NCBI GenBank assembly: GCA_965644265.1 | Contig: OZ286466.1 | Span: 96,782,001-96,846,000, forward strand | DNA: 64,000 nucleotides | Source of the DNA: Glycera tridactyla | Lineage: Eukaryota | Direction: 5' to 3' | In this document: in pieces, positions 1,207-62,730 of the stretch | How positions within the stretch are numbered: the first letter of the stretch is position 1 | Layout: each line of letters starts with the position of its first letter | Notes under the pieces: generated by a model | The model's database searches: none | The model's input: only the letters and a program-made list of their open reading frames with translations | Told to the model about the DNA's origin: nothing | Position numbers and translations under genes: made by a program

Positions 1207-1345
1207 ATGACAATGTTAAAGTATGCAGTCGAAACAATCAAAATGTTGAGGAAGGGCTGTTTTCTAGCAAAAACTGACATCGAAACTGCCTTCAGGCTTT
1301 TGCAAATTTGCAAACAAGAATACAGACTTATCGGATTCACTTTGT
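1207..1345 (+). pseudogene. DIRS/Ngaro reverse transcriptase fragment
   Basis: TIKMLRKGCFLAKTDIETAFRLLQI...EYRLIGF matches the KxDIxxAFRLLP motif seen in the other DIRS RTs in this window. Confidence 0.8.
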
Positions 1346-3119
1346 TTTGTTGGGGGTTTAACGTCACGTCAGCTCCATCTGGGCAATATTGTGACGCCCT
1401 CCTTCAGGGTTCCAAACGGAAGGTGAAAATATATGAAATTCATAGACACTCAAAGTGCCATTTCTGCGACGTGCACTTGGGAGGGCAGCAAAGCTCTTCA
1501 CTTGCTGTCAAGTTGCTGTTCTCAGTCAAATAAAGTTGAGAAGATTTCTCGCCGCACACGTAGCGGGCAAATTGAACTTGATTGTCCATCAGTCAATGCG
1601 GATCATAACACCTATATGGGATGGGGCTAACCGCCACGGTCAGCTTCGATCTTGCTACCAAATAAGCTACACCACTTAGAAAAGGTGGAGGAAACTCCTT
1701 TACGTGCCCATTAATGTGGTTTGTTTTGTTTGTTTGTTTGTTTGTTTAGATTTAACGTCCTTTCAACCACCCCTGGACATATCAGACTGTAATACCAATC
1801 TCAGTCACAGATGTGCTTGAGACCTTTGGTCCTAGCACCGATTCATGAAGCAAATCACTGGTTTCTCCTCGTGGCAGACAACATCAATAAAACTGTACAT
1901 GTCCTGGATTCACTGAATAATCAGGAGCGAGTCGAAAGATATCAAGACCTCTGGTGTATTTTCTTGTATTATAAGTGAGTTTCTCGAACGATTTCTTGAA
2001 GAAATCGTTCAAGTCACTGGCAGGCTATTGTTTGTTTGTTTGTTTGGGTTTAACGTCCTTTCAACCAACCTTGGTTATATCAGACTGATAAAGTGAAAAT
2101 GCTGGAGAAAAGGGGCCATCCCTACTCTTTGCGAAAGAGAGTGGTGGCTCTTCTATGTGCATACAGGACCAGACTCACATACACACGGCCAGCCTTCGAT
2201 ATCCCAGTGTGCATGCACTGGGTTTTGCCAAACCCTAATAATTCTACAAATACCAATAAAACGGTTGGAAAATGCTGTCGCAGGCTTCAAATGACAAAAT
2301 GACCTCGTTGACATGAATATAGTGAACATGATTGTGGCATATTCTATAGATGACGTATGTAACTGGTTGTAACCTGATACTCAATAACAATGTTTTTTAA
2401 AGCAAAGCGCAGCACAGGTTGAGCACTTATGTTCGCAGATTACGTAACAAATGTGTTCAATAAGAAACCGTTTGTTGTGTGTTTGTGTTCAACGTTCTCT
2501 CAATCTACTTGGGTTATATTCGATTGGAAACTGAAAATGCTGAATGAAAGAGGCATTAATGCCGGGGAGCCATCCCTACTCTTTGCGAGGGACAGGAGTG
2601 GTTTCTTTTACATGCATGCAGGAATGGACTCCTATATGTTTGATATGCTCAGGCTGCACATGAACAGAGGTAGGTATCCTGGGAATTTCCAAATCTTCTG
2701 TCTTTCTGGACAGTCTGGGAAGTTGTGATTGCAAGTAGAGAGAGGGGGGGGGGGCGCTAATCAGAGGTTGAGATTGTATTCTTAGGGGAAGGGGGAGGTT
2801 CGAGGATCAAGTCTGAGATTGAGATTAAAAAAAAGAAGAGATTGTGATGGAGGAGGAGTGCTGTACTGAGTTGTGTGTGAGTGGTTGTTGGCGTCTCATA
2901 CGTTAAGCTGATCAGTGAATATCTGGTAAATATCTGGTGTCCATCAGAGACTGCTACTTAAAAAACACAAACATTACATAGTTCGTTTTCTGTGTAGGAC
3001 ACGTTTATCCAGTGAGGATGTGTCATGTTTAGGGAGGTTGTTGGAGTCATTCATGATTTCAGGTTGAAACTCAATCTCAACATTACAGTTACACACCCTT
3101 TGCCATATGATACATAAAA

Positions 3120-3780
3120 TATGGAGATGGTTAGACTTTCAGGGAAATCACTGAAAAACTACATGGTGAGCATCCTGCTTCCCCTGTATGCCGCGAAGGC
3201 AAACGACTTGTTGGTTGCAACAACAAAAGAGAGGAGGTAGGGTGCTGTAAAGAGACTTCTAGGCAAGTCCTTGAAGAACAACATGGTAAGCATTCTGCCT
3301 TCTCCTGAAGGTGATCGACTTGTTGGTTGCAACAACAAAAAAGCGGAGGCGGGGTGCTGTGGAGAGAACTTGTATATTACTTGTAGAATGGAGTTGGTCC
3401 GACTACTCGGGAAGTCTCTAAAGAACCACATGGTCAGCATCCTGCTTTCTCCTGATGCAGTGAAGGCGATCAACTTGTTGATTGCAAAGAGGGGAGTATG
3501 ATGATGCAAAGACGTGCACGTATTCCCACGGCTAAGCAGCTAAAGACCACTAGACAGTAGCCAAGAATTGCGGAGGATCGCTGTGGGGTGCCCTGAGTTG
3601 ATATGCCCAGGAAGGGTCACAGCAACGGACATGCGGAAATATGCAGCTGTAGTAATGCAAATGACGGGGGAGAAGCAATGTTTGTTTGTTTGTTTGCAGC
3701 TGGCCGCTGATATTTTGAGAAATTGTAATCTACAATGTATTCAATTTTGGCATATGCAAACAAAACTAGATGCACTCAGG
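3120..3780 (+). pseudogene. Crypton-like tyrosine recombinase C-terminal half, copy 1
   Basis: LVRLLGKSLKNHMVSILLSPDAVKAINLLIAKRGV...LRRIAVGCPELICPGRVTATDMRKYAAVVMQ...LAADILR; resembles the RGKRGRKVPVLL...TSTKLRKHVAT...LADFLGH YR family of animal genomes (alignment from memory). Confidence 0.7.
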
Positions 3781-3960
3781 TGTTCAGGATGTAATTAATC
3801 ATTGTTGGCGTTTCCTACGAGAGAAAATTGCGTTTTAAAACTGAATGAGGATGACTAGATCTCTGCATCACTGATGCTGGCGCGTGCGTTGGAACTTCAG
3901 TTGGATTCTATTGGCGTGATGATGGTTTTTTTTTGTTTGGGTTTAACGTCCTTTCGACCT

Positions 3961-4078
3961 CGACGGCCCCCGGCAGGCAGTGACTCTTTTCTCCAGCATT
4001 TTCAGTTTTTTTTTCAGTCCGATATAACCCAAGTGGGTTTAAGTGACGTTAAACTTAAACAAACAAACAAACAAACAA
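3961..4078 (+). mobile_element. 5'-truncated family-A LINE 3' end in the rare plus orientation
   Basis: ...ttcagtccgatataacccaagtgggtttaagtgacgttaaactt(aaac)n; inserted into the hairpin of a minus-strand A2 copy; empty site near 7475. Confidence 0.88.
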
Positions 4079-5049
4079 CTTCCTATGGTCATATCGAACC
4101 GAAAATGCTGAATAAAAAAGGCACCGCTGCCAAGGGCCATCCTTACTCTTCCCTACAGCAGTGGTTCTTTAACGTGCAGCCTTTGTTGGCATGCACTGGA
4201 TTCAAACAGATGACATTCGAATGACTCGGCACAAACGCCACCATAAACTATCGATTTGATGAGGGATATCCGAAGATTTAACCCATGATGTTTGTTTGTT
4301 TGTTTGTTTGTGGTTTAGCATCCTTTCAACCACCGTTAGTTATATCAGACTGAAAAACTGAAAAAGCTGAAGAAAAGAGGCACTGCCGCCGGGGGCCATC
4401 CCTACTCTTTGCGAATGAAACATTCAATTTATATTAGCTTGCTTATAAAGAAAATAATTCATCCACCATATATCAAGATATCCTGATCTGACATGTGTTG
4501 TTCTTCCGAGGTCATGATACGAGAATTAAAGCAGCTGGTTTGCAAAAGTGTAATCCTATATTGGCGGGGGTCTTACATTTTCACATATTTGGCAGCTTCT
4601 TTGAAACAGATAGAATCCGAAGCGGAAAGTGTGAGCCGCAAAATTAACTTCATCATGAAGAACTTGGTTGGTTGGTTCTTGTTTAACGACACGTCAGCAC
4701 CACCTGGGCTACATTGTGATGCACATGCAATCGGGCATGGGTGGGATCTTCCAAGACTCCTCCTTCTGCGTCCCAAACGGAAGGTGAGAATGTATGAAGT
4801 TCAGACACTCAGCCATTTCCAACTACTGATTACCAGCACATAACCGGACAGCTGACTCACGTGATCTCCCAATATTGGAGTCTTCACCATCTGTGGTTTC
4901 GCTGTCGAAAATGTCTAATTAAATTACACATGTCATGTAATGTGGATTCCCGTAGACACCAAATAAGAACCACATGTACTCGATGACAGGAGAATAGACC
5001 TATTAGATGCAGGCACTCACCATAAAATCTGAGATACAGTTCGCAGCGA

Positions 5050-6058
5050 CAGGATCTGAATAAGTGGATGCAAAGTGACGCCATATTGGCTTATGCCGAT
5101 GACTCTGAAATGAACATGGGTCGTAATAAGGAAGGACACCCTAGCGGGCTTGGATATTCCGTTGTATACACCACCACGCTTAACATACGATATACAAAAT
5201 TGCCAAGTGTTCTTCGACAATTTCTTTACGTCCGTGACCCTGGTTGAGAAATTGCTGCACGTCGGTCTGTATGCATGTGGGACTATACGGGCCCTGAGAC
5301 TTCTTATGTGAAATTACCAATCAGAAACTTGCCCGCAGTGAGAGTGTAATCAAACCAAAAGGGCAGCTTGTTGTGTGCACTTGGATGGTTGGTTGGTTGG
5401 TTCCGGTTTAACTGCCTGTCAGCACCATCTGGGCTATGTTGTGACGCCCATGCAGTGGGCATGGGTGGGATTTTCCGAGACTCCTCCTTCTGGGTTCCAA
5501 ACGGAATGTGAAAATATATGAAATTCACAGACACTCAAAGTGCCATTTCTGCGACGTGCACTTGGGAGGGCAGTAAAGCTCTTCACTTGCTGTCAAGTTG
5601 ATGGTCACAGTCGAATAAAGTTGAGAAGATTTCTTGCCGTACACGTAGCGGGCCAATTGAACTTGATTGTCCATCAGTCATTACGGATTATAACACCAAT
5701 ATGGGTGGCGCTAACCGCCACGATCAGCTTCGATCTTGCTACCAAATAAGCTACACCACTAAGATATGGTTGAGGAAACTCCTTTATGTGCTCATCAATG
5801 TGGTTGGTTTTGTTTGTTTGTTTGTTCAGGTTTAACGTCCTTTCAACAATCCTTGGTTATATCAGACAGAAATACCAATCTCAGTTACAGATGTGCTTGA
5901 GACCTTTGGTCCTTGCGCCGATCTATGAAGCAAATCACTGGTTTCTCCTCGTGGCAGACAACATCAATAAAACGGTACATGTCCTGGATTCACTGAATAA
6001 TCAGGAGCGAGTCGAAAGATATCAGGACCTCTGGTGTATTTTCTTGTATCATAAGTGA
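5050..6058 (+). pseudogene. Ulp1/SENP (peptidase C48) protease relic, copy 2 (paralogues ~1470-1975 and ~8110-9560)
   Basis: LNKWMQSDAILAY (N-terminal WLxDxxIxAY-like motif) and LVLAPIYEANHWFLLVADNINKTVHVLDSL (catalytic His and Asp context); interrupted by tail insertions. Confidence 0.7.
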
Positions 6059-7310: not shown

Positions 7311-9851
7311 GATGTAATTAATCATTGTTGGTGTTTCCTACTAGAGAAATTGCGTTTCAAAACTGAGCGAGGATGACAAGATCTCTGCATTGCTGATGCT
7401 GGCGTGTGCGTTGGAACTTCAGTTGGATTCTATGGGCGTGATGATGGGGGTTTGTTTGTTTGGGTTTAACGTCCTTTCGACCTCCTATAGTCATATCGAA
7501 CCGAAAATGCTGAATAAAAGAGGCACCGCTGCCAAGGGCCATCCCTACTCTTCCCTACAGCAGTGCTTCTTTAACGTGCAGCCTTTGTTGGCATGCACTG
7601 GATTCAAACAGATGACATTCAAATGGCTCGGCACAAACGCCACCATAAACTATCGATTTGATGAGGGATATCCGAAGATTTAAACCAAGATGTTTGTTTG
7701 TTTGTTTGTTTGTTTGTGGTTTAGCGTCCTTTCAACCACCGTTAGTTATATCAGACTGAAAAACTGAAAACCTGAAGAAAAGAGGCACAGCCGCCGGGGG
7801 CCATCCCTACTCTTTGCGAATGAAACATTCAATTTATATTAGCTTGCTTATAAAGAAAATAATTCATCCACCATATATCAACATATCCTGATCTGACATG
7901 TGTTGTTCTTCCGAGGTCACGATACGAGAATTAAAGCAGCTGGTTTGCAAAAGTGTAATCCTATATTGGCGGGGGTCTTACATTTTCACATATTCGGCAG
8001 CTTCTTTGAAACAGATAGAATCCAAATAAGAACACGTACTCTATGACAGGAGAATAGACCTATTAGATGCGGGCACTCACCATAAAATCTGAGATACAGT
8101 TTGCAGCGACAGGATCTGAATAAGTGGATGCGAAGTGACGCCATATTGGCTTATGCCGATGACTGAAATGTACATGGGTCGTAATAAGGAAGGACACCCT
8201 AGCGGGCTTGGATATTCCGTTGTATACACCACCACGCTTCACATACGATATACAGAATTGCCAAGTGTTCTTTGACAATTTCTTTACGTCCGTGCCCCTG
8301 GTTGAGAAATTGCTGCACGTCGGTCTGTATGCATGTGGGACAATACGGGCCCTGAGACTTCTCATGTGAAATTACCAATCAGAAACTTGCCCGCGGTGAG
8401 AGTGTAATCAAACCAAAAGGGCAGCTTGTTGTGTGCACTTGGATGGTTGGTTGGTTGGTTCCGGTTTAACTGCCTGTCAGCACCATCTGGGCTATGTTGT
8501 GACGCCCATGCAGTGGGCATGGGCGGGATTTTCCGAGACTCCTCCTTCTGGGTTCCAAACGGAATGTGAAAATATATGAAATTCACAGACACTCAAAGTG
8601 CCATTTCTGCGACGTGCACTTGGGAGGGCAGTAAAGCTCTCCACTTGCTGTCAAGTTGATGATCTCAGCCAGATGAAGTTGAGAAGATTTCTCGCCGCAC
8701 ACGTAGCGAGCCAATTGAACTTGATTGTCCATCAGTCAATGCGGATCATAACACCTATATGGGATGGGGCTAACCCCCACAATCAGCTTCGATCTTGCTA
8801 CGAGATAAGCTACACCACTTAAAAAAGGTGGAGGAAACTCCTTTACGTGCCCATTAATGTGGTTTGTTTTGTTTGTTTGTTTGTTTAGATTTAACGTCCT
8901 TTCACCCACCCCTGGACATATCAGACTGTAATACCAATCTCAGTCACAGATGTGCTTCAGACCTTTGGTCCTTGCGCCGATTTAGACATCCATTAGCGTG
9001 ATTGTGTGCATGAATGTGCGAACAGATGTTTATTGTTTTGGATATGAATGTGAGTATAAATGTATATTGTGTTACTAGTGTTTTCCTCTTCTTGCATATG
9101 ATGTATCGCTTTCTCGCATATTTACGATTGATACAAATACCATATCTTCCAAAATATGTCTATGATTACACGGCACTACATCCAACGGACTGCGTAAGCA
9201 ATTAACACGACCTCTGGGGTCTATTTGTAATCATACTGGTATGACATCGGGCGAATAGATCTGTGACCAGATTTCACCTAGGCATGCGTACCCGCATGCA
9301 CACGTACTTCACCTACATGACATGTGTCACGAATGTACATACTTGATTGATTGATTCATTGTTTTGCTGTACTCCTGTTATACTTGTTCAAATGTCTTAC
9401 GCAATAAACAAATTCTTTATTCATGAAGCGAATCACTGGTTTCTCCTCGTGGCAGACAGCATAAATAAAACGGTACATGTCCTGGACTCGCTGAATAATC
9501 AGGAGCGAGTCGAAAGATATCAAGACCTCTGGTGGTACGTACATTTTCTTGTATCATAGGTGAGTTTCTTGAACAATTTCTTAAAGAAATCGTTCAAGTC
9601 ACTGGCAGGCTATTGTTTGTTTGTTTGGATTTAACGTCCTTTCAACCAACCTTGGTTATATCGGACTGATAAACTGAAAATGCTGGAGAAAAGGGGCCAT
9701 CCCTACTCTTTGCGAAAGAGAGTGGTGGTTCTTCTTTGTGCATACAGGACCAGACTCACATACACACGGCCAGCCTTTGATATCCCAGTGTGCATGCACT
9801 GGGGTTTGCCAAACCCTCATAATTCTACAAATACCAATAAAACAGTTAAGA

Positions 9852-10021
9852 TGGTTGGTTGGTTGGTTCTCCTTTAACGTCACGTCAGCACCGTCTGGGC
9901 TATATTGTGACGCCCATGCAATGGGCATGGGTGGGATCTTCCAAGACTCCTCCTTCTGGGTCCCCAACGGAATGTGAAATGATATGAAATTCACAGACAC
10001 GCAAGGTGCCATTTCAAAAGT
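9852..10021 (-). mobile_element. Full-length family-C short retroposon
   Basis: TSD aacagttaaga (9841-9851, 10022-10032); (GGTT)n tail; empty sites in copies 1 and 2 (~2262, ~6346). Confidence 0.92.
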
Positions 10022-11396: not shown

Positions 11397-12799
11397 ACAA
11401 AACTAGATGCACTCAGGTGTTCAGGATGTAATTAATCATTGTTGGTGTTTCCTACTAGAGAAATTGCGTTTCAAAACTGAGTGAGGATGACAAGATCTCT
11501 GCATTGCTGATGCTGGCGTGTGCGTTGGAACTTCAGTTGGATTCTATGGGCGTGATGATGGGGGTTTGTTTGTTTGTGTTTAACGTCCTTTCAACCTCCT
11601 ATGGTCATATCGGACTGAAAATGCTGAATAAAAAAGGCACCGCTGCCAAGGGCCATCCCTACTCTTCCCTACAGCAGTGGTTCTTTTACGTGCAGCCTTT
11701 GTTGGCATGCACTGGATTCAAACAGATGACATTCAAATGGCTCGGCACAAACGCCACCATAAACTACCGATTTGATGAGGGATATCCGAAGATTTAACCC
11801 ATGATGTTTGTTTGTTTGTTTGTTTGGGGTTGAACGTCCTTTCAACCACCTTTGGTTATATCAGACTAAAAACCTGAAAATGCTGAAGAAAAGAGGCACT
11901 GCCGCCGGGGGCCGTCCCTACTCTTTGCGAATGAAACATACAATTTACATCACCTTGCTTATAAAGAAAAAAATTCATCCACCATATATCCACATATCCT
12001 GATCTGACATGTGTTGTTCATCAGAGGTCATGATACGAGAATTAAAGAGCTGGTTTGCAAAAGTGTAATCCTACACTGAAGGGGGTCTTACATTTTCACA
12101 TATTTGGCAGCTTCTTTGAAACAGATAGAATCCGAAGCGGGAAGTGTGAGCTGCAAAATTAACTTCATCATGAAGAACTTGGTTGCTTGGTTTTGGTTTA
12201 AAGTCACGTCAGACTCCTTCTGTGTCCCAAACGGAAGGTGAAAATGTATGAAATTCAGACACTCAGCCATTTCCAACTACTGATTTCCAGCACATAACAG
12301 GACACAGCTGACTTACGTGATCTCCCAATATTGGAGTCTTCACCATCTGTGGTTTGTTTGTTTGTTTGTTTTAGTTTAATGTCACTTAAACCCGCTTGGG
12401 TTATATCGGACTGAAAAAACTGAAAATGCTGAAGAAAAGAGTCACTGCCTGCCGGGGGGCGTACCTAGTCTTTGCGAAAGACAGCAGTGGATCTTTAATG
12501 TGCGTAAAGGAAAAGGCTCCTAAATACATGGCCGGCCTTTGATATCCCAGTCGGCATGCACTGGGTTAGCATGCACACAATTCATATTTGTCTAAATATT
12601 CCCAATTCATGCAAATAACCAAATATGTCTGTTGGATCGACTTCCATGAAGAGTTGTGTCATATTTTCTACAGTGTAATACTTTACTCTAGTTTGCGATA
12701 GTTTTCTACAGTCGAGCAATAAATGTTTGACGGTGAGATGGCATCCGCATGCAAAGCAATTAGGATTGCCTTGTTTTTTCAGAAGGTGTGAGTGGGTGA

Positions 12800-12859
12800 T
12801 TGTTTGTTTGTTTGTTTTGTTGGTGGTTTAACGTCACGTCAGCACCATCTGGGCTATAC
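12800..12859 (-). mobile_element. Minimal 60-bp family-C tail insertion
   Basis: TSD tgtgagtgggtga (12787-12799, 12860-12872). Confidence 0.9.
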
Positions 12860-13750
12860 TGTGAGTGGGTGAGATATGTATGTCCTATCCTCAGACGGGA
12901 AAGTACTATCTCCTCTCTTCTATTCATAGTTCTCACAGGGAATCCGTCCTCAAGTTTTGGTCTGATGTGATATAATTTATTTCGCTTTTTGGTTCCCCAT
13001 TCATTCTGCCAGAGTTGGTCAATATAGAGCTTTATTCTTGGTTTGAAGTCAGAATAATGGATTTCCATCTCAGTGACTGGCAAACCTAGAGCCCTTTTGG
13101 CCGCTTTATCCGCTGCTTCATTTCCAGGAATTCCAATATGGCTCGGAATCCAGCAAAGTCTAACAGTCTTTTGATGATCTTTGATTATTTGATACTCTTG
13201 CAAGATTTGCAAGAGTATACAGTTCCTGAGATTTCCTTGCAAGGCCTGCAGAGATGACAGGGAGTCTGTGAAAATCATGAACTTTTGTTTTTCCGACCTT
13301 GATAAGTATTTGAAAGCCATTAGTAAGGCCCTTAGTTCAGCTGAGAACACTGTTGACCAATCAGGTAATCTACAGTAATAAGGTTGTGATTCTGTATAAA
13401 CAGCTGCAGATGCTTTGCTGTCACATTTGGATCCATCTGTGAAGATGGCCTCATGATCACTATAACGTGACCTAATCTCTAGGTATCTACTTTTGTATAG
13501 CGATGGGTTGGTGCTCTCCTTTGTGGACTGAGTCAAGTCCAGATGTATTTGTGGAATGTCACAGTCCCAGTCCGCAATCTGAGCAGGATCCATCTGTGAT
13601 ATTGGGAGTGTGTCAAAGTCACAACTTCCAAAGTGATTTTCGAATCTTATTCCAAGAGGAGCAATGACGTTGAGATTTTCTTGGAATTCCTGTTTATATT
13701 TAGGCCTGAAGACACTCTCATGTGTTGGATTCGTTGGGTTTGCTTTCAAT
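12860..13750 (-). pseudogene. LINE ORF2 RNase H region of the outer copy
   Basis: AIFTDGSK...VFSAELRALLMA...IFTDSLSSLQAL...CWIPSHIGIPGNEAADKAAK...SRLRIGHTYLTHS. Confidence 0.93.
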
Positions 13751-13756
13751 TTCAGA

Positions 13757-14235
13757 CAGTTTGTTTGTTTGTTTAAGTTTAACGTCACTTAAACCCACTT
13801 GGGTTATATCGGACTGAAAAAAAAAAAAACTGAAAATGCTGAAGAAAAGAGTCACTGCCTGCCGGGGGCCGTCCCTACTCTTTGCGAAAGACAGCAGTGG
13901 ATCTTTAACGTGCGTCAAGGAAAAGACTCCTATCAGCACGGCCGGCCTTTGATATCCCAGTCGGCATGCACTGGGTTAGCATGCACACGATTCATATTTG
14001 TCTAAATATTCCCAATTCATGCAAATAATCAAATATGTCTGTTGGGTCGATTTTCATGAAAATTTGCGTCATATTTTCAACATTGTAATATTTCACTCTA
14101 GTTTGCGATAGTTTTCTACAGTCGAGCAATAAATGTTTAACTGTGAGATGGCATCCGCATGCAAAGCAATTAGGATTGCCTTGTTTTTTCAGAAGGTGTG
14201 AATGGGTGAGATATGTATGTCCTATCCTCAGTACT
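13757..14235 (-). mobile_element. Nested 5'-truncated family-A LINE copy
   Basis: ORF2 tip, UTR and tail interrupt the outer frame RRI*LxPQY|CLKLKANP; short agt/cagt duplication. Confidence 0.8.
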
Positions 14236-14492
14236 GGGGACCTAACTATATCCTTCGTAGATGAAGTGAAGGTTCATTGGCTTCCACATGGAGACTTTCA
14301 GTAGGTGATGTCCGAAAAGCTCGGAGGCATATGCGTAAAGCTTGGTTATGGACTGTATCAAGCATTTTGAGGTTGCTTGGGTATGCTGAGCCATAAATCA
14401 TGCACCCATAATCTAATTTAGATCGAATAAGAGATCTGTAAACCATGAGCAGGGTCTCCCGGTCAGCTCCCCAGTCCAGGTGGGATAGCATG

Positions 14493-15430
14493 TTTGTTTG
14501 TTTGTTTGTTTAAGTTTAACGTCACTTAAACCCACTTGGGTTATATCGGACTGAAAAACTGAAAATGCTGAAGAAAAGAGTCACTGCCTGCCGGGGGCCG
14601 TCCCTACTCTTTGCGAAAGACAGCAGTGGATCTTTAACGTGCGTCAAGGAAAAGACTCCTATCAACACGGCCGGCCTTTGATATCCCAGTCGGCATGCAC
14701 TGGGTTAGCATGCACACGATTCATATTTGTCTAAATATTCCCAATTCATGCAAATAATCAAATATGTCTGTTGGATCGATTTTCATGAAAAGTTGCGTCA
14801 TATTTTCAACATTGTAATACTTTACTCTAGTTTGCGATAGTTTTCTACAGTCGAGCAATAAATGTTTGACAGTGAGATGGCATCCGCATGCAAAGCAATT
14901 AGGATTGCCTTGTTTTTTCAGAAGGTGTGAATGGGTGAGATATGTATGTCCTATCCTCAGACGGGAAAGTACTATCTCCTCTCTTCTATTCATAGTTCTC
15001 ACAGGGAATCTGTCCTCAAGTTTTGGTCTGATGCGATATAATTTATTTCGCTTTTTGGTTCCCCATTCATTCTGCCAGAGTTGGTCAATATAGAGCTTTA
15101 TTCTTGGTTTGAAGTCAGAATAATGGATTTCCATCTCAGTGACTGGCAAACCTAGAGCCCTTTTGGCCGCTTTATCGGCTGCCTCATTTCCAGGAATTCC
15201 GATATGGCTCGGAATCCAGCAAAGTCTAACAGTCTTTTGATGATCTTTGATTTTTTGATACTCTTGCAAGATTTGCAAGAGTATACAGTTCCTGAGATTT
15301 CCCTGCAAGGCCTGCAGAGATGACAGGGAGTCTGTGAAAATTATGAACTTTTGTTTTTCCGACCTTGATAAGTATTTGAAAGCCATTAGTAAGGCCCTCA
15401 GTTCAGCTGAGAACACTGTCGACCAATCAG
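14493..15430 (-). mobile_element. Nested 5'-truncated family-A LINE copy (RNase H ORF 14721-15416)
   Basis: Interrupts outer LDMLKV|LSHLDWGADRE; ends in the 3' UTR and (AAAC)n. Confidence 0.85.
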
Positions 15431-16747
15431 GTAATCTGCAATAATAAGTGCACCTTCAGCATGTCAAGTGCCCGCAGGCATTTGACTTTGAGTTGCTGAA
15501 TATGGGGTTTGAAAGTCAATCGTTGGTCAAAGACCAGGCCTAGAAACTTTGTTTGTTCCACTACTGGTATTGCTGATCCACCCAGAAAGAGCTCAGGTTC
15601 ATCATGATGCCTTGTTGATCTACAGAAATGCATGGAAACTGTTTTGGTTTTAGAAAATTTAAAGCCATTCTTGTCCGCCCAGTCTTGAAGTTTGTATAGG
15701 GTTTGCTGTAGTTTCCTCTCCACTACCCAAACTTGTCTAGCTCCATAGCAGATAAGAAAGTCATCTACATATAAGGAGCAATTGGTGTCCTGGGAGAGGC
15801 ATTCAACAATACTATTCATTTTAATGCTGAAAAGGGTCACTGATAAAATGCTTCCTTGTGGGACCCCCATTTCCTGGTCGAAATTATCTGAGAAGGTAGA
15901 TCCAACTCGGACACGGAAAAGACCGATCCCTCAAAAACTCCTCTATGAAAATGGGCATTCTGCCTCTAAGGTTCATTTGGAGTAGATCTTTCATAATTCC
16001 ATATTTCCAGGTGGTGTCATAGGCCTTCTCCATGTCAAAGAAAACTGCAAGTAAGTGCTGCTTCTGAACAAAGGCCTCACGAATAAATGTCTCAAACCTT
16101 ATCAGGTTGTCAAGTGTATTTCTGCCCTTCCAGAAACCATTCTAATATGGTGTTAGCAAGTCACTCGACTCCAAGTACCAAACCAACCTCTTATTTATCA
16201 TTCTTTCCATGGTCTTACAGACACAGCTTGTGAGTGCTATTGGTCTGTAATTTACAGGATCAAATGGATCCTTACCTGGCTTTGCTATGGGGATGACGAT
16301 GGCTTCTGCCCATGAAATTGGGAAGCATCCAGTCTCCCAAATTTGGCTAAAGATATCAAGCATCAGTTGCAAAGAGCAGGCTGGCAGATGTCTCAGCATT
16401 TGATAATGGACGTCATCTTGCCCTGGGGAGGTATTATGGGATGCATTCAATGCAGTTTCTAGTTCAGTCATCGAAAAGAGCTGATTATATTCTTCTGTAT
16501 TATCTGATGTTAAATCAAGTTGTTTTCCTTCAGCCTTTTCTTTATAATTTTGAAATTCCTCTGTGTGATTTTCAGAAGATGAATTTTTTGCAAACTGTGA
16601 TGCCAGTGATTCCGAAATATCCTGAGGTTGTGTGATCAGATGATCATCTTTTTTTAGATGGTGGATTCGTGGGCCTCTACCCTTTCCACGGATTCGTTGA
16701 ATCATATTCCGAGCCTTATTGATGGGTGTGTTTGAATTGAGTCCCAA
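15427..16747 (-). pseudogene. LINE ORF2 reverse transcriptase (stop and frameshift lesions)
   Basis: NYRPIALTSCVCKTMERMIN, FFDMEKAYD, GVPQGSILS, LYVDD, KFLGLVFD. Confidence 0.95.
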
Positions 16748-17054
16748 TACAAACTCCCTCTAACAGTGGCGCTTACTGCTGCGACATGTCCTACGTGACC
16801 CTGCCTTCAGTACTTTGTACTCAGTCAATAAGTCCACAGCAGGTCTTCTGGAGAAGTCTTTCAGTGCTTGTTTTCTTTCATCAATAGCTTCTCTGCAATC
16901 ATCGTTGAACCATGGTTTGGAAGCCTGTCCTTTATAAGGAGAGGTCTTGGGGATAGCTTGTAACGCTACACCATGCATTATCTCTGTGAAGTTTTGAATA
17001 GGATCATCTGCACTCAGAATGTCCACACTGGATAATTTTTCCTTACAGAGACTG

Positions 17055-17771
17055 TCATATAGTCCAGTTTGCTTTTGTGAGATTCCATGTTGGTAGCCTG
17101 TCTGCAATCCTGTTGTCATTACTCAGTATGATAGGGAAATGGTCACTGCCATGTGGATCAGTTTCTGTCTGCCAGGTAAAGTCTAGCAGAAGAGATGGAT
17201 GGCAAATGGAGAGGTCAATAGATGTGAAAGATCCACTCCCTGGGTGAAAATAGGTGGGGGCGCCATCATTCCAAATACTTAGGTTTTTATGGTTGATAAA
17301 TTCTTCAACCACATCACCCCTAGCGTCAGAATTTTTTCCTCCCCATATAGCGTTATGTGCATTGAAGTCCCCAAACATTATGGCTGGGGCTGGTAGTTGA
17401 TCGTAAATTCTATTAAGTTTTCTCACAATAATAGTTTCGCTAGGGGGAAGATAGATTGAACAAATTGAGATTATCCTATCCAATGTGATTCGGGTAGCCA
17501 CTGCCTTCAAAGTTGTAGTCAGTGGGATCTGCGACTGCGGGATGTTCTGCCTGACAAGCAGAGCCACATCTCCATGCGTTCCGTTCGCATGATCGATTGT
17601 GGCTTTTATATTATAGGTAATATATCCACGGAGTTCGATATCTTTTTGCATTAAGGTTTCCTGGAGACATATCACTGCTGGGCAATATTTAGCTACTAAT
17701 AAATCTAATTCATGCTTATTTGCTCTAAATCCACGACAATTCCACTGTAGTAGGACTGTCATGGCTGTCAC
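17055..17771 (-). pseudogene. LINE ORF2 apurinic-type endonuclease
   Basis: LQWNCRGF, ICLQET, SIYLPP, GDFNAHN, SIDLSIC, SDHFPI. Confidence 0.95.
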
Positions 17772-18013
17772 TTGGTTTTAAAACGGCCCTTTTTGTTACC
17801 TCCCCCCTTAATGGGGTGGTGGACCTGATGATCAGCTGATCCCCCCTTGGGAAGACCCCCTGATCCTTTAGTCAGGCGGTCTCGAAGATAAGGAGGGCTC
17901 CGGTTTAGATGGATGCTCTGCCTCACCTGTACCTCAGAGGCAGGTTTTGAGGACGCAGCCGTGTTGTCTGGTTTTGTCTTTGGCTTCTTCTGTGGAGGCG
18001 GTGAGCGTCTCAT
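17768..18013 (-). pseudogene. C-terminal tip of LINE ORF1
   Basis: Basic low-complexity frame ending with an overlap of the ORF2 ATG. Confidence 0.6.
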
Positions 18014-20614: not shown

Positions 20615-21053
20615 ATTGTTGTTTGTTTGAGTTTAACGTCCTTTCAACCACCGTTGGTTATATCAGACTGAAAAACTGGAAATGTTGAAGAAAAGAGGCA
20701 CTGCTGCCAGGGGTCGTCCCTACTCTTTGCGAAGGATGGCAGTGGTTCTTCAACATGCATACAGGAACAGACTCCTATATACACGGTCGGCCTTTGATAT
20801 CCCAGTCAGCATGCACTGGGTATCACGTACATGGATTGGTTCGCACCTGGAGCACCCTCTCGGTTTGTATCAAATTCAACAGAAGGGGGTTACCATGACT
20901 CCAAAGAGATGAATAGTGAGGTAAGCAATCATCCTATCACCATCCCTAACCACCCCCCCCCCCCCCTCTCATTACTTCAGATTCTTGAGATTTGAAAGAT
21001 TCTATTTCCCCTCTCCAAGGTGAGTTCCTAGGAACATATCTTCCCCTTGTCGA
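20615..21053 (-). mobile_element. Family-A2 tail with an unclassified 5' body (paralogue ~39735-40215)
   Basis: gtttaacgtcctttcaaccaccgttggttatatcagactg tail, cccagtcagcatgcactggg domain, shared downstream body. Confidence 0.75.
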
Positions 21054-24759: not shown

Positions 24760-26200
24760 CGGCCTGATGGTCGAAGAGTCTGTTGACATTGCTGTCTTCA
24801 AGAAACTTATTATTTACATACAGATAGTAAAAGATGGCGCAATAACAGTTTATCTAGGTAAAAATGTTGATGTCCGGAGATGTCAACAATGTCGGTCAGT
24901 CTCATTTTTATCTGATGCAAATTTGCGATGCCAGGGCAAAATACATAACCACCAGGATCAAACTTGACAGTCTTTAGCTCAGCTGTCACAGGGGAATTTC
25001 AGAAAATTGATGTGTCAAGTGTTGGAATTTGTGGTGATTGGTACATGGCAGAAACTTGTAGCCTTGTTTGACAGCAATTTTTCCTGCTAAAATAGCTTTG
25101 TTAGACATCTCATCATTACATTTATGAGAATGCCCCACTTGTTTGTTTTATTCAGTCATGCAGTCAGAACAGTAAGTTTTCATAGTTTGTTGACAGGTCC
25201 AATCGTGAAAAGTGTCAGTGGTTTGTTTGTTTGTTTGAGGCTTAACGGCATGTATCAACCCACAGGATTATGTATGCCGTGTGTTCTTGGTTAATGAAAG
25301 CTAGATGGTCTCTCCCCTGCAGACATCACTCTCACAAACCCTGAACACAAGATGATGGGGAACTCCCTGAAAGGTTGTCAAATGGAAGTAGCTGATGGTT
25401 CAGACACACCCCTACCAACTCTCACTCTACAAAAAAATAACATATTGAACCTGATGATGGCATATCTAATTACATGTATGTAACTGGCTGGAAGCTAACA
25501 CTCAAGCCTGATAGCTATGCTTTTTTCACACAAAGCGCAGTACTTGAAACAAGGAAAAGCATTAAGTTCGGAGAATACTCAAACAATGTCTTCAATTACG
25601 AACTGTCAACTTCAAACCAGCTTTACAATCATGGCTTGCCCTATGCTTGCAGTACAATGCCATCACACAACCTAGTAAACCTAGTCGCAGCCCTAGTAAC
25701 CCAGAACTGGTGTGCCTGGTACCCGCGTTTTGCATAGTGACAATATCTGCTACAGGCAAACCATCAGCTACCTACACCTGAGACCATTCCACTGAAGAAA
25801 TAAGAAATTACTTAGAGGGATAGGAAAGAGGTGAAGAAAAAGAAATCTGGTGATAGTGCAATTTTGGTAGGAAATGCCTGAAGATAGGTGATAGAAAATT
25901 TTGAAGGTATGTTTTCATTCAACCCCCCATTCCAGAAGATATTGAGAAGAAGAGAAGGGATGATGCTACACCCAGGCCACATCATCCCCGATGGCAACAC
26001 TTCAGAGTAAAAGTCCCGCGCCCATTGGTGGCTGCCATCTATAGAGACCCTGGACTCCCACCCTACCCACTATTCAGTGATGGGATTTGGGTTGGGAAAA
26101 AACGGGTTTTTTTTGCTAGTAATCTGCATTCTGTGAACAAAAACACATTCTCTCCCATTTGAGCGATTGGTTTCGAGTCCTGTCAGCTGTTGAGCGATAT
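24760..26200 (+). pseudogene. hAT transposase relic split by a family-B insertion
   Basis: LMVEESVDIAVFKKLIIY (DEStD motif); after removing B the sequence reads SDGIWVGKK (SDGA...GKK-like). Confidence 0.6.
25221..26070 (-). mobile_element. Full-length family-B non-autonomous retroposon (~830-850 nt)
   Basis: (GTTT)n-gaggcttaacggc tail; conserved far end ccctggactcccaccctacccac; flanking tcagtg repeat. Confidence 0.88.
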
Positions 26201-33500: not shown

Positions 33501-34760
33501 TGATCATGTTGTTGGGATGCAAAATTTGTCTTGGCGTCGGGAAAACGGGTTGGTGTATTACTTGAAGGTTCCTACTTTTAAGCACTTGAGGGGGAGACAA
33601 GTAACTTTAAAAATCTCTCAGAAGAATTTATCGGCGTGCCCAGTCCTGGCTATAAGCAGGTTTCTCACATCCAGGGGCACCACAGGTGAATACCTGTTTT
33701 CTCACCCTGACTTGCGACCAGTCACAAGGGACCACGCGGCTCATGTCTTGCGTGATGCTTTGCGTTTTATTGGCATTGAGCCGTCATTGTACTGCACTCA
33801 CTCTTTCAGAGTGGGACGGGCCACTGACCTCTATGCATCGGGGTATACTGATGCTCAACTGCGAGCGATTGGGCGATGGAATTCTGATGCTTTTCATGTT
33901 TATTTGAGGTTTGTTTGTTTGTTTAAGTTTAACGTCACTTAAACCCACTTGGGTTATATCGGACTGAAAAACTGAAAATGCTGAAGAAAAGAGTCACTGC
34001 TTGCCGGGGGCCGTCCCTACTCTTTGCGAAAGACAGCAGTGGATCTTTAACGTGCGTCAAGGAAAAGACTCCTATCAGCACGGCCGGCCTTTGATATCCC
34101 AGTCGGCATGCACTGGGTTGACTATTTCAAGTGCTAATTTCTCTATGACTGGGGGGGGGGGCGGGGGACAGTACTCTCCATGTCCAGTAACTGCGTTTTG
34201 GGGCTCCTATACTGGTGCAGGATAGGAATTTGGCGTATTCAGTTACTAGACATACTTATCCTCAAATAGAGCAGTTTTATTAATTCTGAAATCATATTTG
34301 ATGCATTCAATGCTGATTTGATAATGTCTTCACAGCAGTTTTATAGAATGATAAGTGTACATTTGTTTTTTGGTTTTGTTGGGGGTTTGACGTTACGTCA
34401 GCTCCATCTGGGCTATATTGTGACGCCCATGCAATTTCGGGAATGAAGAACTTCGTACCTTGCCTATTACGGAAACACCTCGTATGGTGGCTCAGAATGT
34501 ATTTGATTTGTGTAGGTCATTTTCCCGCGATTATGAAGTGGATGCAATTGTGAATCTGGCCTGTCTGAAACGATGTACCAATCTGTTATGTAGTGTGGAT
34601 GAGTTCTCCAACCTTACACAGCAGTATAATGAGAAGTTAAAGTCTCTCTGTAGTCACAGCACAGTTTGTTCATTCCACCGTATGTCAGGTTTCTTCACTC
34701 ATCATCATCTCACACAGGACATTAACCTGCCGATTACGGACTTCACCGGATATAACTTCC
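30545..34760 (+). mobile_element. Best-preserved Ngaro-like YR retrotransposon: gag (31031-31993), RT/RNase H (~31960-33390), YR (~33400-33908), SGNH hydrolase (~34150-34760)
   Basis: gag WSQAFDIFVAVY...YDELFR and Cys/His knuckle; ARSDIKSAFRLLP, HILDDYL, FTDASF; YFACMRIGEL...CPVLAI...YCTHSFRVGRAT...IGRWNSDAFHVY; downstream FWGS...YNEKLKSLC SGNH-like frame. Confidence 0.9.
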
Positions 34761-37557: not shown

Positions 37558-37584
37558 TTATGCGTCTGTTGGTTTGATTTTGTT

Positions 37585-52300: not shown

Positions 52301-52390
52301 AGCGGCATGCATCATATGGTGTACAAGTGGGGAAAAGTCTATTTTGTGTTATTGCTCTAACCGTATACTGTGGGAAAGAGCTGCAGGCGA

Positions 52391-52450
52391 TTGATTGATT
52401 GATTGATTTTGGTTTAACGTCCTTTCAACACCAAATGGGTCATCTCGGAC
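52391..52450 (-). mobile_element. Minimal 60-bp A2-type tail insertion with (AATC)n tail
   Basis: TSD gctgcaggcga (52380-52390, 52451-52461). Confidence 0.92.
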
Positions 52451-52559
52451 GCTGCAGGCGACGATCGACTGTCGACACGTGTTCAACGAAAGGCTGAATA
52501 TTTCCACCGTATTTCTCCAGACACTGCAACAGAGTGAGTAACATTTTATCCGACTTGTG

Positions 52560-56030: not shown

Positions 56031-56035
56031 TAACC

Positions 56036-57935: not shown

Positions 57936-58311
57936 NNNNNNNNNNNNNNNNNNNNNNNNNNNNNNNNNNNNNNNNNNNNNNNNNNNNNNNNNNNNNNNNN
58001 NNNNNNNNNNNNNNNNNNNNNNNNNNNNNNNNNNNNNNNNNNNNNNNNNNNNNNNNNNNNNNNNNNNNNNNNNNNNNNNNNNNNNNNNNNNNNNNNNNNN
58101 NNNNNNNNNNNNNNNNNNNNNNNNNNNNNNNNNNNNNNNNNNNNNNNNNNNNNNNNNNNNNNNNNNNNNNNNNNNNNNNNNNNNNNNNNNNNNNNNNNNN
58201 NNNNNNNNNNNNNNNNNNNNNNNNNNNNNNNNNNNNNNNNNNNNNNNNNNNNNNNNNNNNNNNNNNNNNNNNNNNNNNNNNNNNNNNNNNNNNNNNNNNN
58301 NNNNNNNNNNN
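57936..58311. other. Assembly gap (N run)
   Basis: Run of N. Confidence 1.
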
Positions 58312-58419
58312 CTCGCTCTCTTTGCCTGCTGGTTTGTCTCAGTCATTGTTCATAGTTCATAGTCATAGTCAGTGAGCCAGCCCTCCAGCCAGTCAGTTAG
58401 GCGACCAGCCAACCAGTTG

Positions 58420-58690
58420 ATTGATTGATTGATTGTTTGAGGTTTAACGGCATGTATCAACCCACAGGATTATTTATGCCGTGTGTTCCTGGTTAATGAA
58501 AGCTAGATGTTCTCTCCCCTGCAGACATCACTCTCACAAACCCTGAACACAAGATGATGGGGAACCTGAAAGGTTGTCAAGTGGAAGTAGCTGACAGTTC
58601 AAACACACCTCTACCTAATCTAAACATATACAAATAAACCTAGGATGGCATATCTAACTATATAGCTGGCTGGAAGCTAACACCCAAGTT
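58420..58690 (-). mobile_element. 5'-truncated family-B copy with a mixed (GATT)/(GTTT) tail
   Basis: gattgattgattgtttgaggtttaacggcatg... Confidence 0.85.
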
Positions 58691-61310: not shown

Positions 61311-61504
61311 TCTTCTGAACACTGGTCTTGTTTGTCTGAGGGGCAAAATAAAACCAAACTGCGCTCTACAGCATCTACGATTTTGGAGAGGTCAAAGCTA
61401 CCAAAATCCCTCAAGATAAACATCAATGAATATGTTCTGACGACGCAACACTTTAGAGGACCTATACCCCTTCCTATTCAATTGGTTCCAACTATAAGCA
61501 ATAT

Positions 61505-62043
61505 CTTAGGCTGCCCACCTGAGCCTTTTTCTTCACCACCTAAGCCAATTTCTCTGAAATAAGCCTCATCAACCCAAAAATGCTATGTTTTCCTTTGTTC
61601 AGAATGGGTCATGTAGCCCCTTGCATCATCTCTCAGTGGGCCAATTCAAATTCGAATGTGGCAAATGGTGCAGGGCCTACCCCTCCGCAAGACCCTTTAT
61701 AGTATAATTCAGGGATCTGCGGAGGGGTTGGCCCGGCACCATTTGCCACATTCAAATTTCAAAGCTGAGAGATGATGCAATGGGCCTCATGACCCACTCC
61801 AAAACAATGAACAAGGGCCGCGCCTTGCAGGGGATTGGCACTTCATTTGGTGTATTGACCTGTTGAATACAACTTCAAAGGCTCGGATCAGCAATTCTAG
61901 ATTCAAAGAATAATAAACATGGTCAATGTGCTCAACAAATATGATCTAAAGAACAAGAGAAACAGAATTTTTGGGTTAATGAGACTTATTCCAGAGAAAT
62001 TGGCTTAGGTGGTGAAGAAAAAAGCTCAGGTGGGCAGCCCAAG
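61505..62043. mobile_element. Foldback/MITE: ~75-bp terminal inverted arms plus an internal ~190-bp palindrome (61606-61795)
   Basis: 61505-61580 is the near reverse complement of 61968-62043; tgtggcaaatggtgc...gcaccatttgccaca inner arms. Confidence 0.8.
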
Positions 62044-62384
62044 ACTTTATATAGTAGGGAAATCCCTGGTTCATTGAACATGTCTCAGACTCCGTGCCCA
62101 GGAATGGCCCAATCGAATCCAAAATGACCCACTCAGTTTTATGTCATTGGGTCTCTCGACACATCAGGTTTTTTCTCCGCACATCCCTGTGATCTATCTA
62201 TGTATGTATATTCAGTGGCAGCTCCATACAGAGAACTGAGCAGGATGGTATTTGAGCAGATTCATACCCCTCTTTTTTGTGCCGGATGAGCTCAGTTTGG
62301 ATGTGGTTGGATGCATTCAGAGAAAGATGACAGACACTTCAATCTGCTCCTGGTGCTTTATAGGTAGGTAGCATTTGTTGAGAT

Positions 62385-62730
62385 TTGTTTTTTGTTTATT
62401 TGAGGTTTAACAGCATGTATCAATCCTAGGGTTATGTATCCTGTGTGTTCCTGGTCGATGAAAGCTAAATGCTCTCTCCCCTGCAGATATCTCTGTCACA
62501 AACCCTGAAAAAAAGATGATGGGGAACGTGAAAGCTTGTCAAGTGAATGTAGCTGACAGCTCAGACACACCTCTACCTACTCTTCATGACCAAATTGAAT
62601 CTAATTATGGCATATCTAACTATGTAACTGGCGGGAAGCTAACACTCACGCCTGATAGCAATGCTTTGTTTTTGCAAAGCGCAGCACTTGACACGAGGAA
62701 AATCATTATATTCGGAGAATACTCAACCAA
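62385..62730 (-). mobile_element. Diverged 5'-truncated family-B copy
   Basis: tttgaggtttaacagcatgtatc tail and B body. Confidence 0.8.

What the first reader, a model, noticed from the sequence alone, without database searches (positions are those of the whole stretch)
1345..62460. One conserved 3' stem-loop + GTTAA + tetranucleotide tail shared by a LINE and three unrelated passenger RNAs
Seen (sense strand): A = GTC-CGATAT-AACCC-aagt-GGGTT-TAAGT-GAC-GTTAAAC; A2 = GTC-TGATAT-AACCA-acgg-TGGTT-GAAAG-GAC-GTTAAAC (compensatory C-G to A-T); C = CGTCAC-AATAT-AGC-ccagatggt-GCT-GAC-GTGACG-TTAAA; B = ACGGCAT-ACAT-AATCC-tgt-GGGTT-GATAC-ATGCCGT-TAAGC. In each, an outer stem, an internal loop and an inner stem keep their geometry while the primary sequence diverges. 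Established: 'stringent' LINEs recognise their own 3' stem-loop and mobilise SINEs that share it (Okada model). Inference: a multi-passenger retroposition system whose recognition code is structural, possibly served by several related I-clade LINEs.
Basis: partly seen in the sequence, partly recalled or inferred. Interest (0 to 1): 0.72.

Follow-up and report, generated by a model that had tools for sequence, protein, structure and literature searches.

The report
Shared LINE tail hairpin and passengers
A very active jumping gene (a LINE) of this marine animal and several short non-coding hitch-hiker elements all end in the same small RNA hairpin, a CGTTAA motif and a four-letter repeat. Related LINEs from many other organisms carry the same hairpin with compensating base changes, so it is a real but familiar kind of "copy me" signal.

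Summary
About 55 retroposon 3' ends in the window carry a roughly 40-nt two-helix hairpin, then CGTTAA(A/G) and a (CAAA)n, (CCAA)n or (CAAT)n tail.

The LINE (LINE-A) has many intact copies elsewhere in the genome: ORF1 of 457 aa and ORF2 of 1229 aa with endonuclease, RT, RNase H and a Cys/His motif.

The new result is that homologous LINEs (33-65% ORF2 identity) in metagenome and ENA contigs have the same module 43-388 nt after ORF2. It shows clear covariation: 91% of cells paired against 25-56% when partners are slid, and 43 double-sided changes against 9 in shuffles.

A covariance model built only from those foreign tails finds family C best in the window (E 6e-10). Types A, A2 and D follow (about 1e-4), and B is only marginal (about 0.1) although every one of its pairs forms in register.

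- B (851 nt) and C (about 150 nt) share only about 50 nt with the LINE, have fixed 5' ends and TSDs, and no Pol III head.
- A2 is not unrelated: it is the last 210 nt of a LINE 3' UTR.
- LINE-A's own outer stem is only 3 bp.
- No LINE ending in a B or C tail was found, and trans-mobilisation is untested.

LINE/SINE tail sharing, including Nimb LINEs in bivalves, is published. This is a new member of a known kind. Other windows of this genome carry similar notes.

The parts
12352..17929 (-). One 5'-truncated LINE-A copy. It is broken by two nested 5'-truncated LINE-A inserts (14491-15449 and 13759-14231) and one C fragment (12799-12866), all in the same orientation. Endonuclease lies at 17058-17777, RT at 15430-16759 and RNase H at 14724-15455.
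   Evidence: Pfam hits; tblastn with an intact ORF2; blastn against intact copy L043
14491..14559 (-). Type A 3' module at the end of a LINE-A body: hairpin 14514-14551 (outer GTC/GAC, inner AACCC/GGGTT), GTTAAAC, then (CAAA)n at 14493-14508.
33909..34119 (-). A-type 'tail-only' short element of about 210 nt, 99% identical to the end of the LINE-A 3' UTR. Same class: 27363-27576 and 41608-41809.
20619..20821 (-). A2-type short element of about 205 nt, 85% identical to the end of the LINE-A 3' UTR; inner stem AACCA/TGGTT. Other A2-like copies: 2028-2224, 6112-6310, 9613-9803, 4288-4418, 7695-7823, 11804-11934.
25221..26071 (-). Family B full-length copy (851 nt); hairpin 25240-25280 (outer ACGGCAT/ATGCCGT, inner AATCC/GGGTT), TAAGC, (CAAA)n. 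Other full copies: 44359-45196 and 48975-49796. 5'-truncated copies: 21562-21965(+), 37579-37763, 48154-48456, 58420-58688.
62388..62733 (-). Older, diverged B-like 3' part (80% to B) with a variant hairpin (inner AACCC/…GGATT). A second variant lies at 46321-46461 (inner AACCC/GGGTT).
9850..10021 (-). Family C copy (about 150 nt plus (CCAA)n); hairpin 9873-9912 (outer CGTCAC/GTGACG, inner TAGC/GCTG). Other copies: 28388-28557, 5384-5555, 8442-8613, 45599-45753, 46460-46585, 43798-43882, 27186-27316, 40218-40363, 4664-4822. Short fragments: 1341-1399, 12799-12866, 34364-34435.
52390..52464 (-). Type D tail (outer GTCC/GGAC, GTTAAAC, (CAAT)n). It is the 3' end type of a second LINE family that has intact 1227-1253 aa ORF2s elsewhere in the genome.
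57936..58311 (.). Assembly gap; not part of any element. The nearest tail ends at 58420.

Best explanation
The shared end is the 3' recognition module of an I-superfamily (I/Nimb-like) LINE lineage.

Read as RNA, the module has these parts in order:
- an outer helix of 5 bp in most lineages (7 bp in B and C, 3-4 bp in LINE-A and LINE-D);
- an A/U-rich 5' internal loop ending in AUA;
- an inner helix of 4-5 bp (UAGC/GCUG, UGAC/GUCG or AACCC/GGGUU);
- a variable apical loop;
- a short 3' internal loop (GA, GAA, GAUAC);
- a single-stranded CGUUAA(A/G);
- a short spacer and a tail repeat whose unit differs between lineages.

Shown here:
- The module ends LINE-A and LINE-D.
- It also ends discrete non-coding elements: A/A2 'tail-only' units of about 210 nt, B of 851 nt and C of about 150 nt. 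These have fixed 5' ends, 5'-truncated copies and 9-13 bp target-site duplications.
- Homologous LINEs of other organisms keep both helices through compensatory changes.

Inferred, by analogy with the eel and zebrafish L2 systems:
- The LINE's ORF2 protein binds this hairpin on the RNA.
- It primes reverse transcription on the terminal repeats at a nicked target.
- Any transcript that has acquired the module is therefore copied in trans.

The likeliest present driver of B is LINE-A. Both carry (CAAA)n, both have an ACCC/GGGU-type inner helix, and both are young (pairwise divergence 1.1% and about 2%). C is older (about 11%). It carries the most canonical version of the module, and its driver may be LINE-A (identical GTGACGTTAAAC) or a LINE that was not found.
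For: - Motifs and counts.
- LINE-A domains and intact copies: at least 17,000 candidate sites and many 1229-aa open frames.
- B and C share only about 50 nt with the LINE.
- B has at least 5,800 candidate sites with full-length matches of 96-97% identity. 9 of 11 sampled copies have 10-13 bp TSDs directly after the tail.
- B-related contig depth rises 10-60 fold toward the 3' end and stops at the element's ends.
- 3 C copies show 9-11 bp TSDs by eye.
- 9 of 10 A2 copies sampled genome-wide start at the same base with unrelated flanks.
- Foreign LINEs carry the module 43-388 nt after ORF2, in the sense orientation in 40 of 42 hits. These include 10 or more loci that were not in the seed alignment.
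- Covariation on the foreign tails: 91.3% of cells paired against 25-56% when slid; 43 double-sided changes against 9.1 in shuffles (0 of 500 shuffles reach it); 6 of 9 pairs show compensatory change.
- Models built only from foreign tails hit the window's tails and almost nothing else. C scores 41-43 bits, A/A2/D 23-26 bits and B 14-16 bits; 39 of 41 hits are on the minus strand.
- In the model's register B forms all 5 outer and 4 inner pairs.
- Family divergences.
- No Rfam family matches A210, B or C.
Against: - No binding or mobilisation data exist. The function of the hairpin is inferred from covariation and from other LINE clades.
- LINE-A, the most active family, keeps only 3 bp of the outer helix. 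Its single-sequence minimum-energy fold is a different hairpin. Single-sequence folding z-scores are weak, from +0.5 to -2.3.
- B is individually marginal against the clade model (E 0.07-0.15, and calibration is rough).
- Tail repeat units differ between C, LINE-A and LINE-D.
- No LINE with a B or C tail was found, but the searches score only the best candidates and cannot exclude one.
- Divergence figures come from top-scoring copies, so they are biased toward young copies.
- Copies within a family are not independent rows in the window alignment.
Confidence: 0.75

Rival explanations
1. Each passenger is served by its own cognate LINE, rather than by one LINE serving all. B and C would have copied their tails from sister LINE families that are rare, extinct or simply not sampled here. 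Recognition would be specific to each pair, as for ZfL2-1 and ZfL2-2.
For: - At least two related LINE families with different tails coexist.
- One A2-type copy extends into LINE-like 3' UTR, so a sister LINE with the A2 tail probably exists.
- The apical loops and repeat units of A, B, C and D differ.
- C is much older than LINE-A.
- Strict cognate recognition is documented for L2 LINEs (PMC4176376).
Against: - No ORF2 remnant lies upstream of any B or C tail in the window.
- The 15 best genome-wide model hits are all short C elements, none of them a LINE.
- B is as young as LINE-A and shares its repeat unit.
Confidence: 0.3
2. The hairpin is conserved for a step other than template choice by the RT. 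Candidates are 3' end formation or termination, RNA stability or localisation, or positioning the terminal repeats for priming and slippage.
For: - Covariation shows that a structure is selected, not what it does.
- The conserved single-stranded CGUUAA and its fixed distance to the repeats would suit a positioning role.
- LINE-A tolerates a nearly lost outer helix.
Against: - Non-autonomous elements that share nothing else keep the whole module, as expected of the feature that gives access to the LINE machinery.
- Homologous roles are shown experimentally for UnaL2 and ZfL2 (PMC1636434, PMC4176376).
Confidence: 0.15
3. The resemblance is only inherited sequence: the tails descend from one ancestor and the apparent stems have no function.
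For: - Primary-sequence motifs are shared (AUA, GUUGA, GACGUUAAAC).
- Single-sequence folding energies are not significant.
- Simple stem-length tests against shuffles are weak (median p 0.19).
Against: - Both helices change on both sides while keeping pairing across LINEs with only 33-65% ORF2 identity.
- The slid-partner and shuffle controls fail to reproduce this.
- B and C differ at two outer-helix pairs by double changes (G-C against U-A, and U-A against C-G).
Confidence: 0.05

Closest known systems
Eel UnaL2 / UnaSINE1 and zebrafish ZfL2-1 / ZfL2-2 (L2 clade, 'stringent' LINEs; PMC1636434, PMC4176376)
   Same: The LINE and its non-autonomous partner share a 3' tail made of a stem with an internal loop plus short terminal repeats. 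In those systems the stem-loop is bound by the ORF2 protein and the repeats serve priming.
   Different: - The LINE clade differs: here ORF2 has RNase H and the I-superfamily architecture.
- The hairpin sequence and the conserved CGUUAA differ.
- The partners here lack tRNA heads.
- Nothing has been tested experimentally here.
Nimb (I-superfamily) LINE partnerships with V and Meta SINEs in bivalves (PMC11481361). Also the shared tail of BivaMeta/BivaMD/BivaV SINEs and gastropod MetaSINEs (PMC4824008), and (CAAA)n-ended mollusc SINEs (PMC4758252).
   Same: - Several different non-autonomous families share a 35-61 bp tail with an I-like LINE in marine molluscs.
- Repeat tails such as (CAAA)n are reported.
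- The idea of many passengers and several LINE partners is stated there.
   Different: - Those papers rest on sequence similarity of tails. In the text I could search, the 2024 paper does not mention secondary structure, and the 2016 MetaSINE paper shows stem-loops only for CR1 and L2 tails.
- Their SINEs are tRNA-derived.
- Whether LINE-A belongs to Nimb proper was not tested.
CR1- and L2-type tails of bivalve SINEs with compensatory changes (PMC4824008, fig. 5)
   Same: The argument is the same: a stem-loop kept between LINE and SINE by compensatory mutations.
   Different: The LINE clades and hairpins differ. Here the covariation is measured over about 37 distinct LINE tails rather than read from two or three sequences.
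LINE-derived non-autonomous elements: Ingi/RIME, SIDEs, LP-SINEs (PMC4758252, PMC11481361 background)
   Same: These are short elements without a Pol III head that depend on a LINE. The A/A2 units consist wholly of LINE 3' UTR sequence.
   Different: - RIME and SIDEs keep both LINE ends, and LP-SINEs keep the LINE 5' end.
- A/A2 keep only the last 210 nt.
- B and C share only about 50 nt with the LINE.

Membership tests
Stringent-type LINE with partner elements sharing its 3' tail (Okada model) | An autonomous LINE and non-autonomous elements end in the same 3' sequence | tested here: met
   LINE-A, A/A2, B and C share the roughly 50-nt end. LINE-D carries a variant.
Stringent-type LINE with partner elements sharing its 3' tail (Okada model) | The shared tail forms a conserved stem-loop supported by compensatory changes | tested here: met
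   Across foreign homologous LINEs, 91% of cells are paired and 6 of 9 pairs show double changes; controls fail. Window tails pair in 82% of cells. Exception: LINE-A's outer helix is only 3 bp.
Stringent-type LINE with partner elements sharing its 3' tail (Okada model) | Short tandem repeats at the very 3' end; 5' truncation and target-site duplications of copies | tested here: met
   (CAAA)n, (CCAA)n and (CAAT)n tails. B has TSDs of 10-13 bp in 9 of 11 copies. Truncated copies and a 3'-biased depth profile.
Stringent-type LINE with partner elements sharing its 3' tail (Okada model) | The ORF2 protein binds the stem-loop and mobilises the partners in trans | not testable with these tools
   This needs a retrotransposition assay and RNA-binding assays.
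Classical SINE (Pol III head from tRNA, 5S or 7SL) | A 5' head derived from a Pol III RNA with A and B boxes | tested here: not met
   No tRNA by ARAGORN. No Rfam match at the gathering threshold, and no relevant match up to E 1 on B, A210 or C. No A/B box pair. T runs of 4-7 lie inside B, C, A210 and A2, upstream of the hairpin.
I-superfamily LINE (I / Nimb / Ingi group) | ORF2 with N-terminal AP endonuclease, RT, RNase H and a C-terminal Cys/His motif, plus a separate ORF1 | tested here: met
   Pfam PF03372/PF14529, PF00078 and PF00075 on the 1229-aa ORF2. Invariant C1172, C1175, H1183 and C1188. ORF1 of 457 aa overlaps ORF2.
Nimb clade specifically | Placement of the RT domain inside Nimb in a phylogeny with reference elements | not testable with these tools
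   No Repbase reference sequences were available. The nearest database proteins are about 50% identical and unnamed, or auto-named 'jockey'.
SIDE / RIME-type internally deleted LINE derivative | The element keeps both the 5' and the 3' end of its parent LINE | tested here: not met
   B and C match LINE-A only in the last roughly 50 nt and not in the 5' UTR. A/A2 match only the last 210 nt.

The most novel reading that the evidence does not exclude
The hairpin-CGUUAA-repeat module would be a deeply conserved, portable 'retroposition tag' of a whole LINE clade spread over many animal (and perhaps other eukaryotic) lineages. About 50 nt would be enough to turn unrelated Pol II-type transcripts without any Pol III head (B, C, and 3'UTR-only units) into high-copy retroposons. 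One enzyme family would tolerate different helix sequences, loops and repeat units, so recognition would be largely by shape plus CGUUAA. The same machinery might also explain the near-total same-orientation clustering of these elements over tens of kilobases.
Probability: 0.25. Interest if true: 0.55.

Novelty: new member of a known kind. Interest (0 to 1): 0.36.

Why it matters
It gives a concrete, testable RNA signal for a LINE group (RNase H-bearing, I/Nimb-like) whose template recognition has not been studied the way L2 and L1 have. The result includes a covariance model and a set of natural variants: different helix sequences, loops and repeat units, and a very active LINE with a nearly lost outer helix. 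These variants already amount to a mutational series.

It also shows that in this genome the passengers are not tRNA-derived SINEs. This matters for repeat annotation, because SINE finders that require Pol III heads will miss families with thousands of candidate sites. As biology it extends a well-known principle rather than overturning it.

Tried and rejected
- **tRNA, 5S, 7SL or ribozyme heads in A210, B and C.** Nothing was found. I considered a self-cleaving ribozyme to explain the fixed 5' end of the 210-nt units, and no Rfam match supports it.
- **B as an internally deleted or promoter-sharing derivative of LINE-A.** There is no similarity to the LINE body or 5' UTR. The exact 5' end of LINE-A was not fixed, because four copies start at different points.
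- **Search for a LINE ending in a C or B tail.** No ORF2 remnants lie upstream of those tails in the window, using LINE-A proteins and 120 foreign ORF2s. A genome search with a foreign ORF2 C-terminus returned only LINE-D. The top 15 genome hits of the RNA model were all short C elements. This is not evidence of absence, because only the best candidates are scored.
- **Single-sequence folding and a simple stem-length shuffle test.** Both were too weak to decide. The MAFFT/RNAalifold consensus recovered only 4 outer pairs because of one-column misalignments. A model-based alignment was used instead.
- **Naming a taxon for a foreign LINE.** The sea-spider protein P0001 could not be located on a contig. 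No supplementary sequences were held for PMC11481361.
- **Laying contigs of public runs on B.** This shows abundance, boundaries and a 3' bias. It cannot show transcription, strand or RNA ends.
- **Consensus sequences.** Only natural copies and tail alignments were used.
Full report
**Observation**

The four quoted tails are present exactly as written. With up to three mismatches they occur 11 (A), 7 (A2), 9 (C) and 9 (B) times, against none expected in shuffles. Each is followed within a few bases by (CAAA)n, (CCAA)n or a related repeat.

A scan for such repeats finds 59 runs, 57 on the minus strand. It also reveals further tail variants at 1725/8868, 7451/11565, 19139, 46321, 52390 and 62403. 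Some copies share flanks, because a 3.5-4 kb segment is duplicated across about 1700-12000. Copy counts therefore overstate the number of independent insertions.

The assembly gap at 57936-58311 lies in unique sequence 109 nt beyond the nearest tail, and no element touches it.

**The elements**

*LINE-A.* The window holds a LINE body with endonuclease, RT and RNase H domains that ends in tail A. Region 12352-17929(-) is one 5'-truncated copy. It carries two nested 5'-truncated copies and a C fragment, all in the same orientation.

Elsewhere in the 2.04-Gb genome the family is very young. There are at least 17,000 candidate sites and many intact 1229-aa ORF2 frames. ORF1 is 457 aa and overlaps ORF2. 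Pfam confirms endonuclease, RT and RNase H, and a conserved Cys/His motif closes ORF2. The 3' UTR is about 235 nt from the ORF2 stop to the end of the tail.

*A and A2 short units.* The last roughly 210 nt of the 3' UTR also occur alone. Of 10 A2-type copies sampled across the genome, 9 begin at the same base with unrelated flanks. One runs 140 nt further into LINE-like UTR. A2 is thus LINE-derived, not an unrelated RNA.

*Family B.* B is 851 nt, with at least 5,800 candidate sites and full-length matches of 96-97% identity. 9 of 11 sampled copies have 10-13 bp target-site duplications right after the tail. Contigs of public runs cover exactly the element, with depth rising 10-60 fold toward its 3' end.

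*Family C.* C is about 150 nt with 9-11 bp duplications.

*What they share and lack.* B and C share only about 50 nt with LINE-A, and B shares nothing with the LINE's 5' region. None of A210, B or C matches tRNA or any Rfam family. All contain T runs upstream of the hairpin. They are therefore not classical Pol III SINEs.

*LINE-D.* A second LINE family has ORF2 frames of 1227-1253 aa. It ends in a variant hairpin with (CAAT)n, which is the type seen at window 52410.

**Is the hairpin real?**

Single-sequence folding is unconvincing. Z-scores run from +0.5 to -2.3, and for A the minimum-energy fold is a different hairpin. LINE-A's outer stem is only GTC/GAC, which is no better than chance.

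The decisive evidence comes from relatives. ORF2 homologues of 33-65% identity were found in the protein collection, on an ENA contig and on 80 metagenome contigs. Wherever the contig reaches past ORF2, a hairpin of the same design appears 43-388 nt downstream. It is followed by GTTAA(A/G) or GTAAA and a repeat of varying unit such as ACAA, AATC, ACTC, TCAT or TATC.

- Outer helices include GGCAC/GTGCC, GGCGC/GCGCC, GACAC/GTGTC, GGCCC/GGGCC and GACGC/GCGTC.
- Inner helices include TAGC/GCTG, TGAC/GTCG and ACCC/GGGT.

A covariance model built from 20 such foreign tails found 42 sites in those contigs. 40 are in the LINE's sense orientation, and more than ten lie in loci not used to build the model. 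On that alignment:

| Measure | Observed | Control |
|---|---|---|
| Cells forming a standard pair | 91.3% | 25-56% with partners slid |
| Cells changed on both sides with pairing kept | 43 | 9.1 in shuffles (0 of 500 reach it) |
| Pairs (of 9) with compensatory change | 6 | 3.9 in shuffles (27 of 500 reach it) |

**The window's tails against that model**

Models trained only on foreign LINEs hit the window's tails and almost nothing else.

| Tail type | Score | E-value |
|---|---|---|
| C | 41-43 bits | about 6e-10 |
| A, A2, D | 23-26 bits | about 1e-4 |
| B | 14-16 bits | 0.07-0.15 |

39 of 41 hits are on the minus strand. B's low score comes from its primary sequence and a longer 3' internal loop. 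In the model's register it forms all five outer and four inner pairs, and its outer helix extends to 7 bp.

B and C differ from each other by double changes at two outer-helix pairs. C carries the most canonical form. The active LINE-A carries a degenerate outer helix, but it shares the 12-mer GTGACGTTAAAC with C. Overall, 82% of cells pair in the window alignment, against 27-51% when slid. Those rows are not independent.

**Who drives whom**

Mean pairwise divergence among sampled copies:

| Family | Divergence |
|---|---|
| B | 1.1% |
| LINE-A 3' UTRs | 2.4% (median 1.6%) |
| LINE-D | 6.6% |
| C | 11% |

The samples are top-scoring copies, so they are biased toward young ones. B shares its age, its repeat unit and its inner-helix type with LINE-A, which makes LINE-A its likeliest driver. 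C is older and its driver is open.

No LINE ending in a B or C tail was found in the window or among the best genome hits of the model. The searches score only the best candidates and cannot exclude one.

**Known context**

- Stringent LINEs that recognise a 3' stem-loop and mobilise partners sharing it are established for L2 elements (PMC1636434, PMC4176376).
- Stem-loops with compensatory changes have been shown for CR1 and L2 tails of bivalve SINEs (PMC4824008).
- Tail homology between Nimb LINEs and V and Meta SINEs, several LINE partners per SINE superfamily, and (CAAA)n tails are reported for bivalves and gastropods (PMC11481361, PMC4758252).

I found no description of this particular two-helix module or of its clade-wide covariation, and it is not in Rfam 15. 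Whether LINE-A is a Nimb element proper could not be tested without reference sequences.

**Verdict**

This is a genuine and well-supported example of a known mechanism. The added value is a defined, covarying RNA module for an I/Nimb-like LINE lineage, plus passengers that lack Pol III heads. Trans-mobilisation, protein binding and the claim of a purely structural code remain untested.

Other windows of this genome carry related first-stage notes: head-less retroposon families, same-direction clustering, and LINE tails with hairpins.

Noticed in passing
window 1-64000; also loci L014-L042: There is an extreme orientation bias. 46-57 tailed retroposon ends lie on the minus strand against 2 on the plus strand. 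In the flanks of LINE-A copies elsewhere, 15 other tails are same-sense against 1 opposite; around B copies the split is 2 against 3. Another window of this genome carries the same remark (s1-320801). The cause is open. Candidates are strand-specific target microhomology to CAAA, antisense selection inside a long intron, or a uni-strand piRNA-cluster-like locus.
   Followed up: partly
window 12352-17929 (-): One LINE-A copy contains two further 5'-truncated LINE-A inserts and a C fragment, all in the same orientation. The overlaps at the junctions are 2-13 nt.
   Followed up: partly
window about 1700-12000: A 3.5-4 kb unit is duplicated in tandem, carrying A2-, A3-, A4- and C-type elements with identical flanks (for example 2048/6134/9627 and 4313/7719/11829). 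Near-identical A2 copies also lie just outside the window on the same chromosome.
   Followed up: no
window 33909-34119, 20619-20821; loci L151-L160: The roughly 210-nt 'tail-only' units start at a fixed base, at a small hairpin (CCCAGT...ACTGGG). This suggests an internal start or a processing site in the LINE 3' UTR. No ribozyme or other Rfam match was found.
   Followed up: partly
window 35872-37161 (+) and 30854-33939 (+): Two other mobile elements lie on the plus strand. One is a DDE_Tnp_4 (PIF/Harbinger-like) transposase ORF. The other is a run of ORFs ending in a tyrosine-recombinase (phage-integrase-like) domain.
   Followed up: no
L045:6676-7117: In a foreign ENA contig, the homologous LINE's 3' UTR, hairpin and tail included, is repeated in tandem directly after its own tail. 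This parallels the tail-only units seen here.
   Followed up: no
window 26296-26697 (-): A diverged LINE ORF2 fragment (79% aa identity to LINE-A over the stretch between endonuclease and RT) lies 225 nt upstream of a full B copy. It is not contiguous with B and not a C-terminal fragment, so it was judged coincidental.
   Followed up: partly
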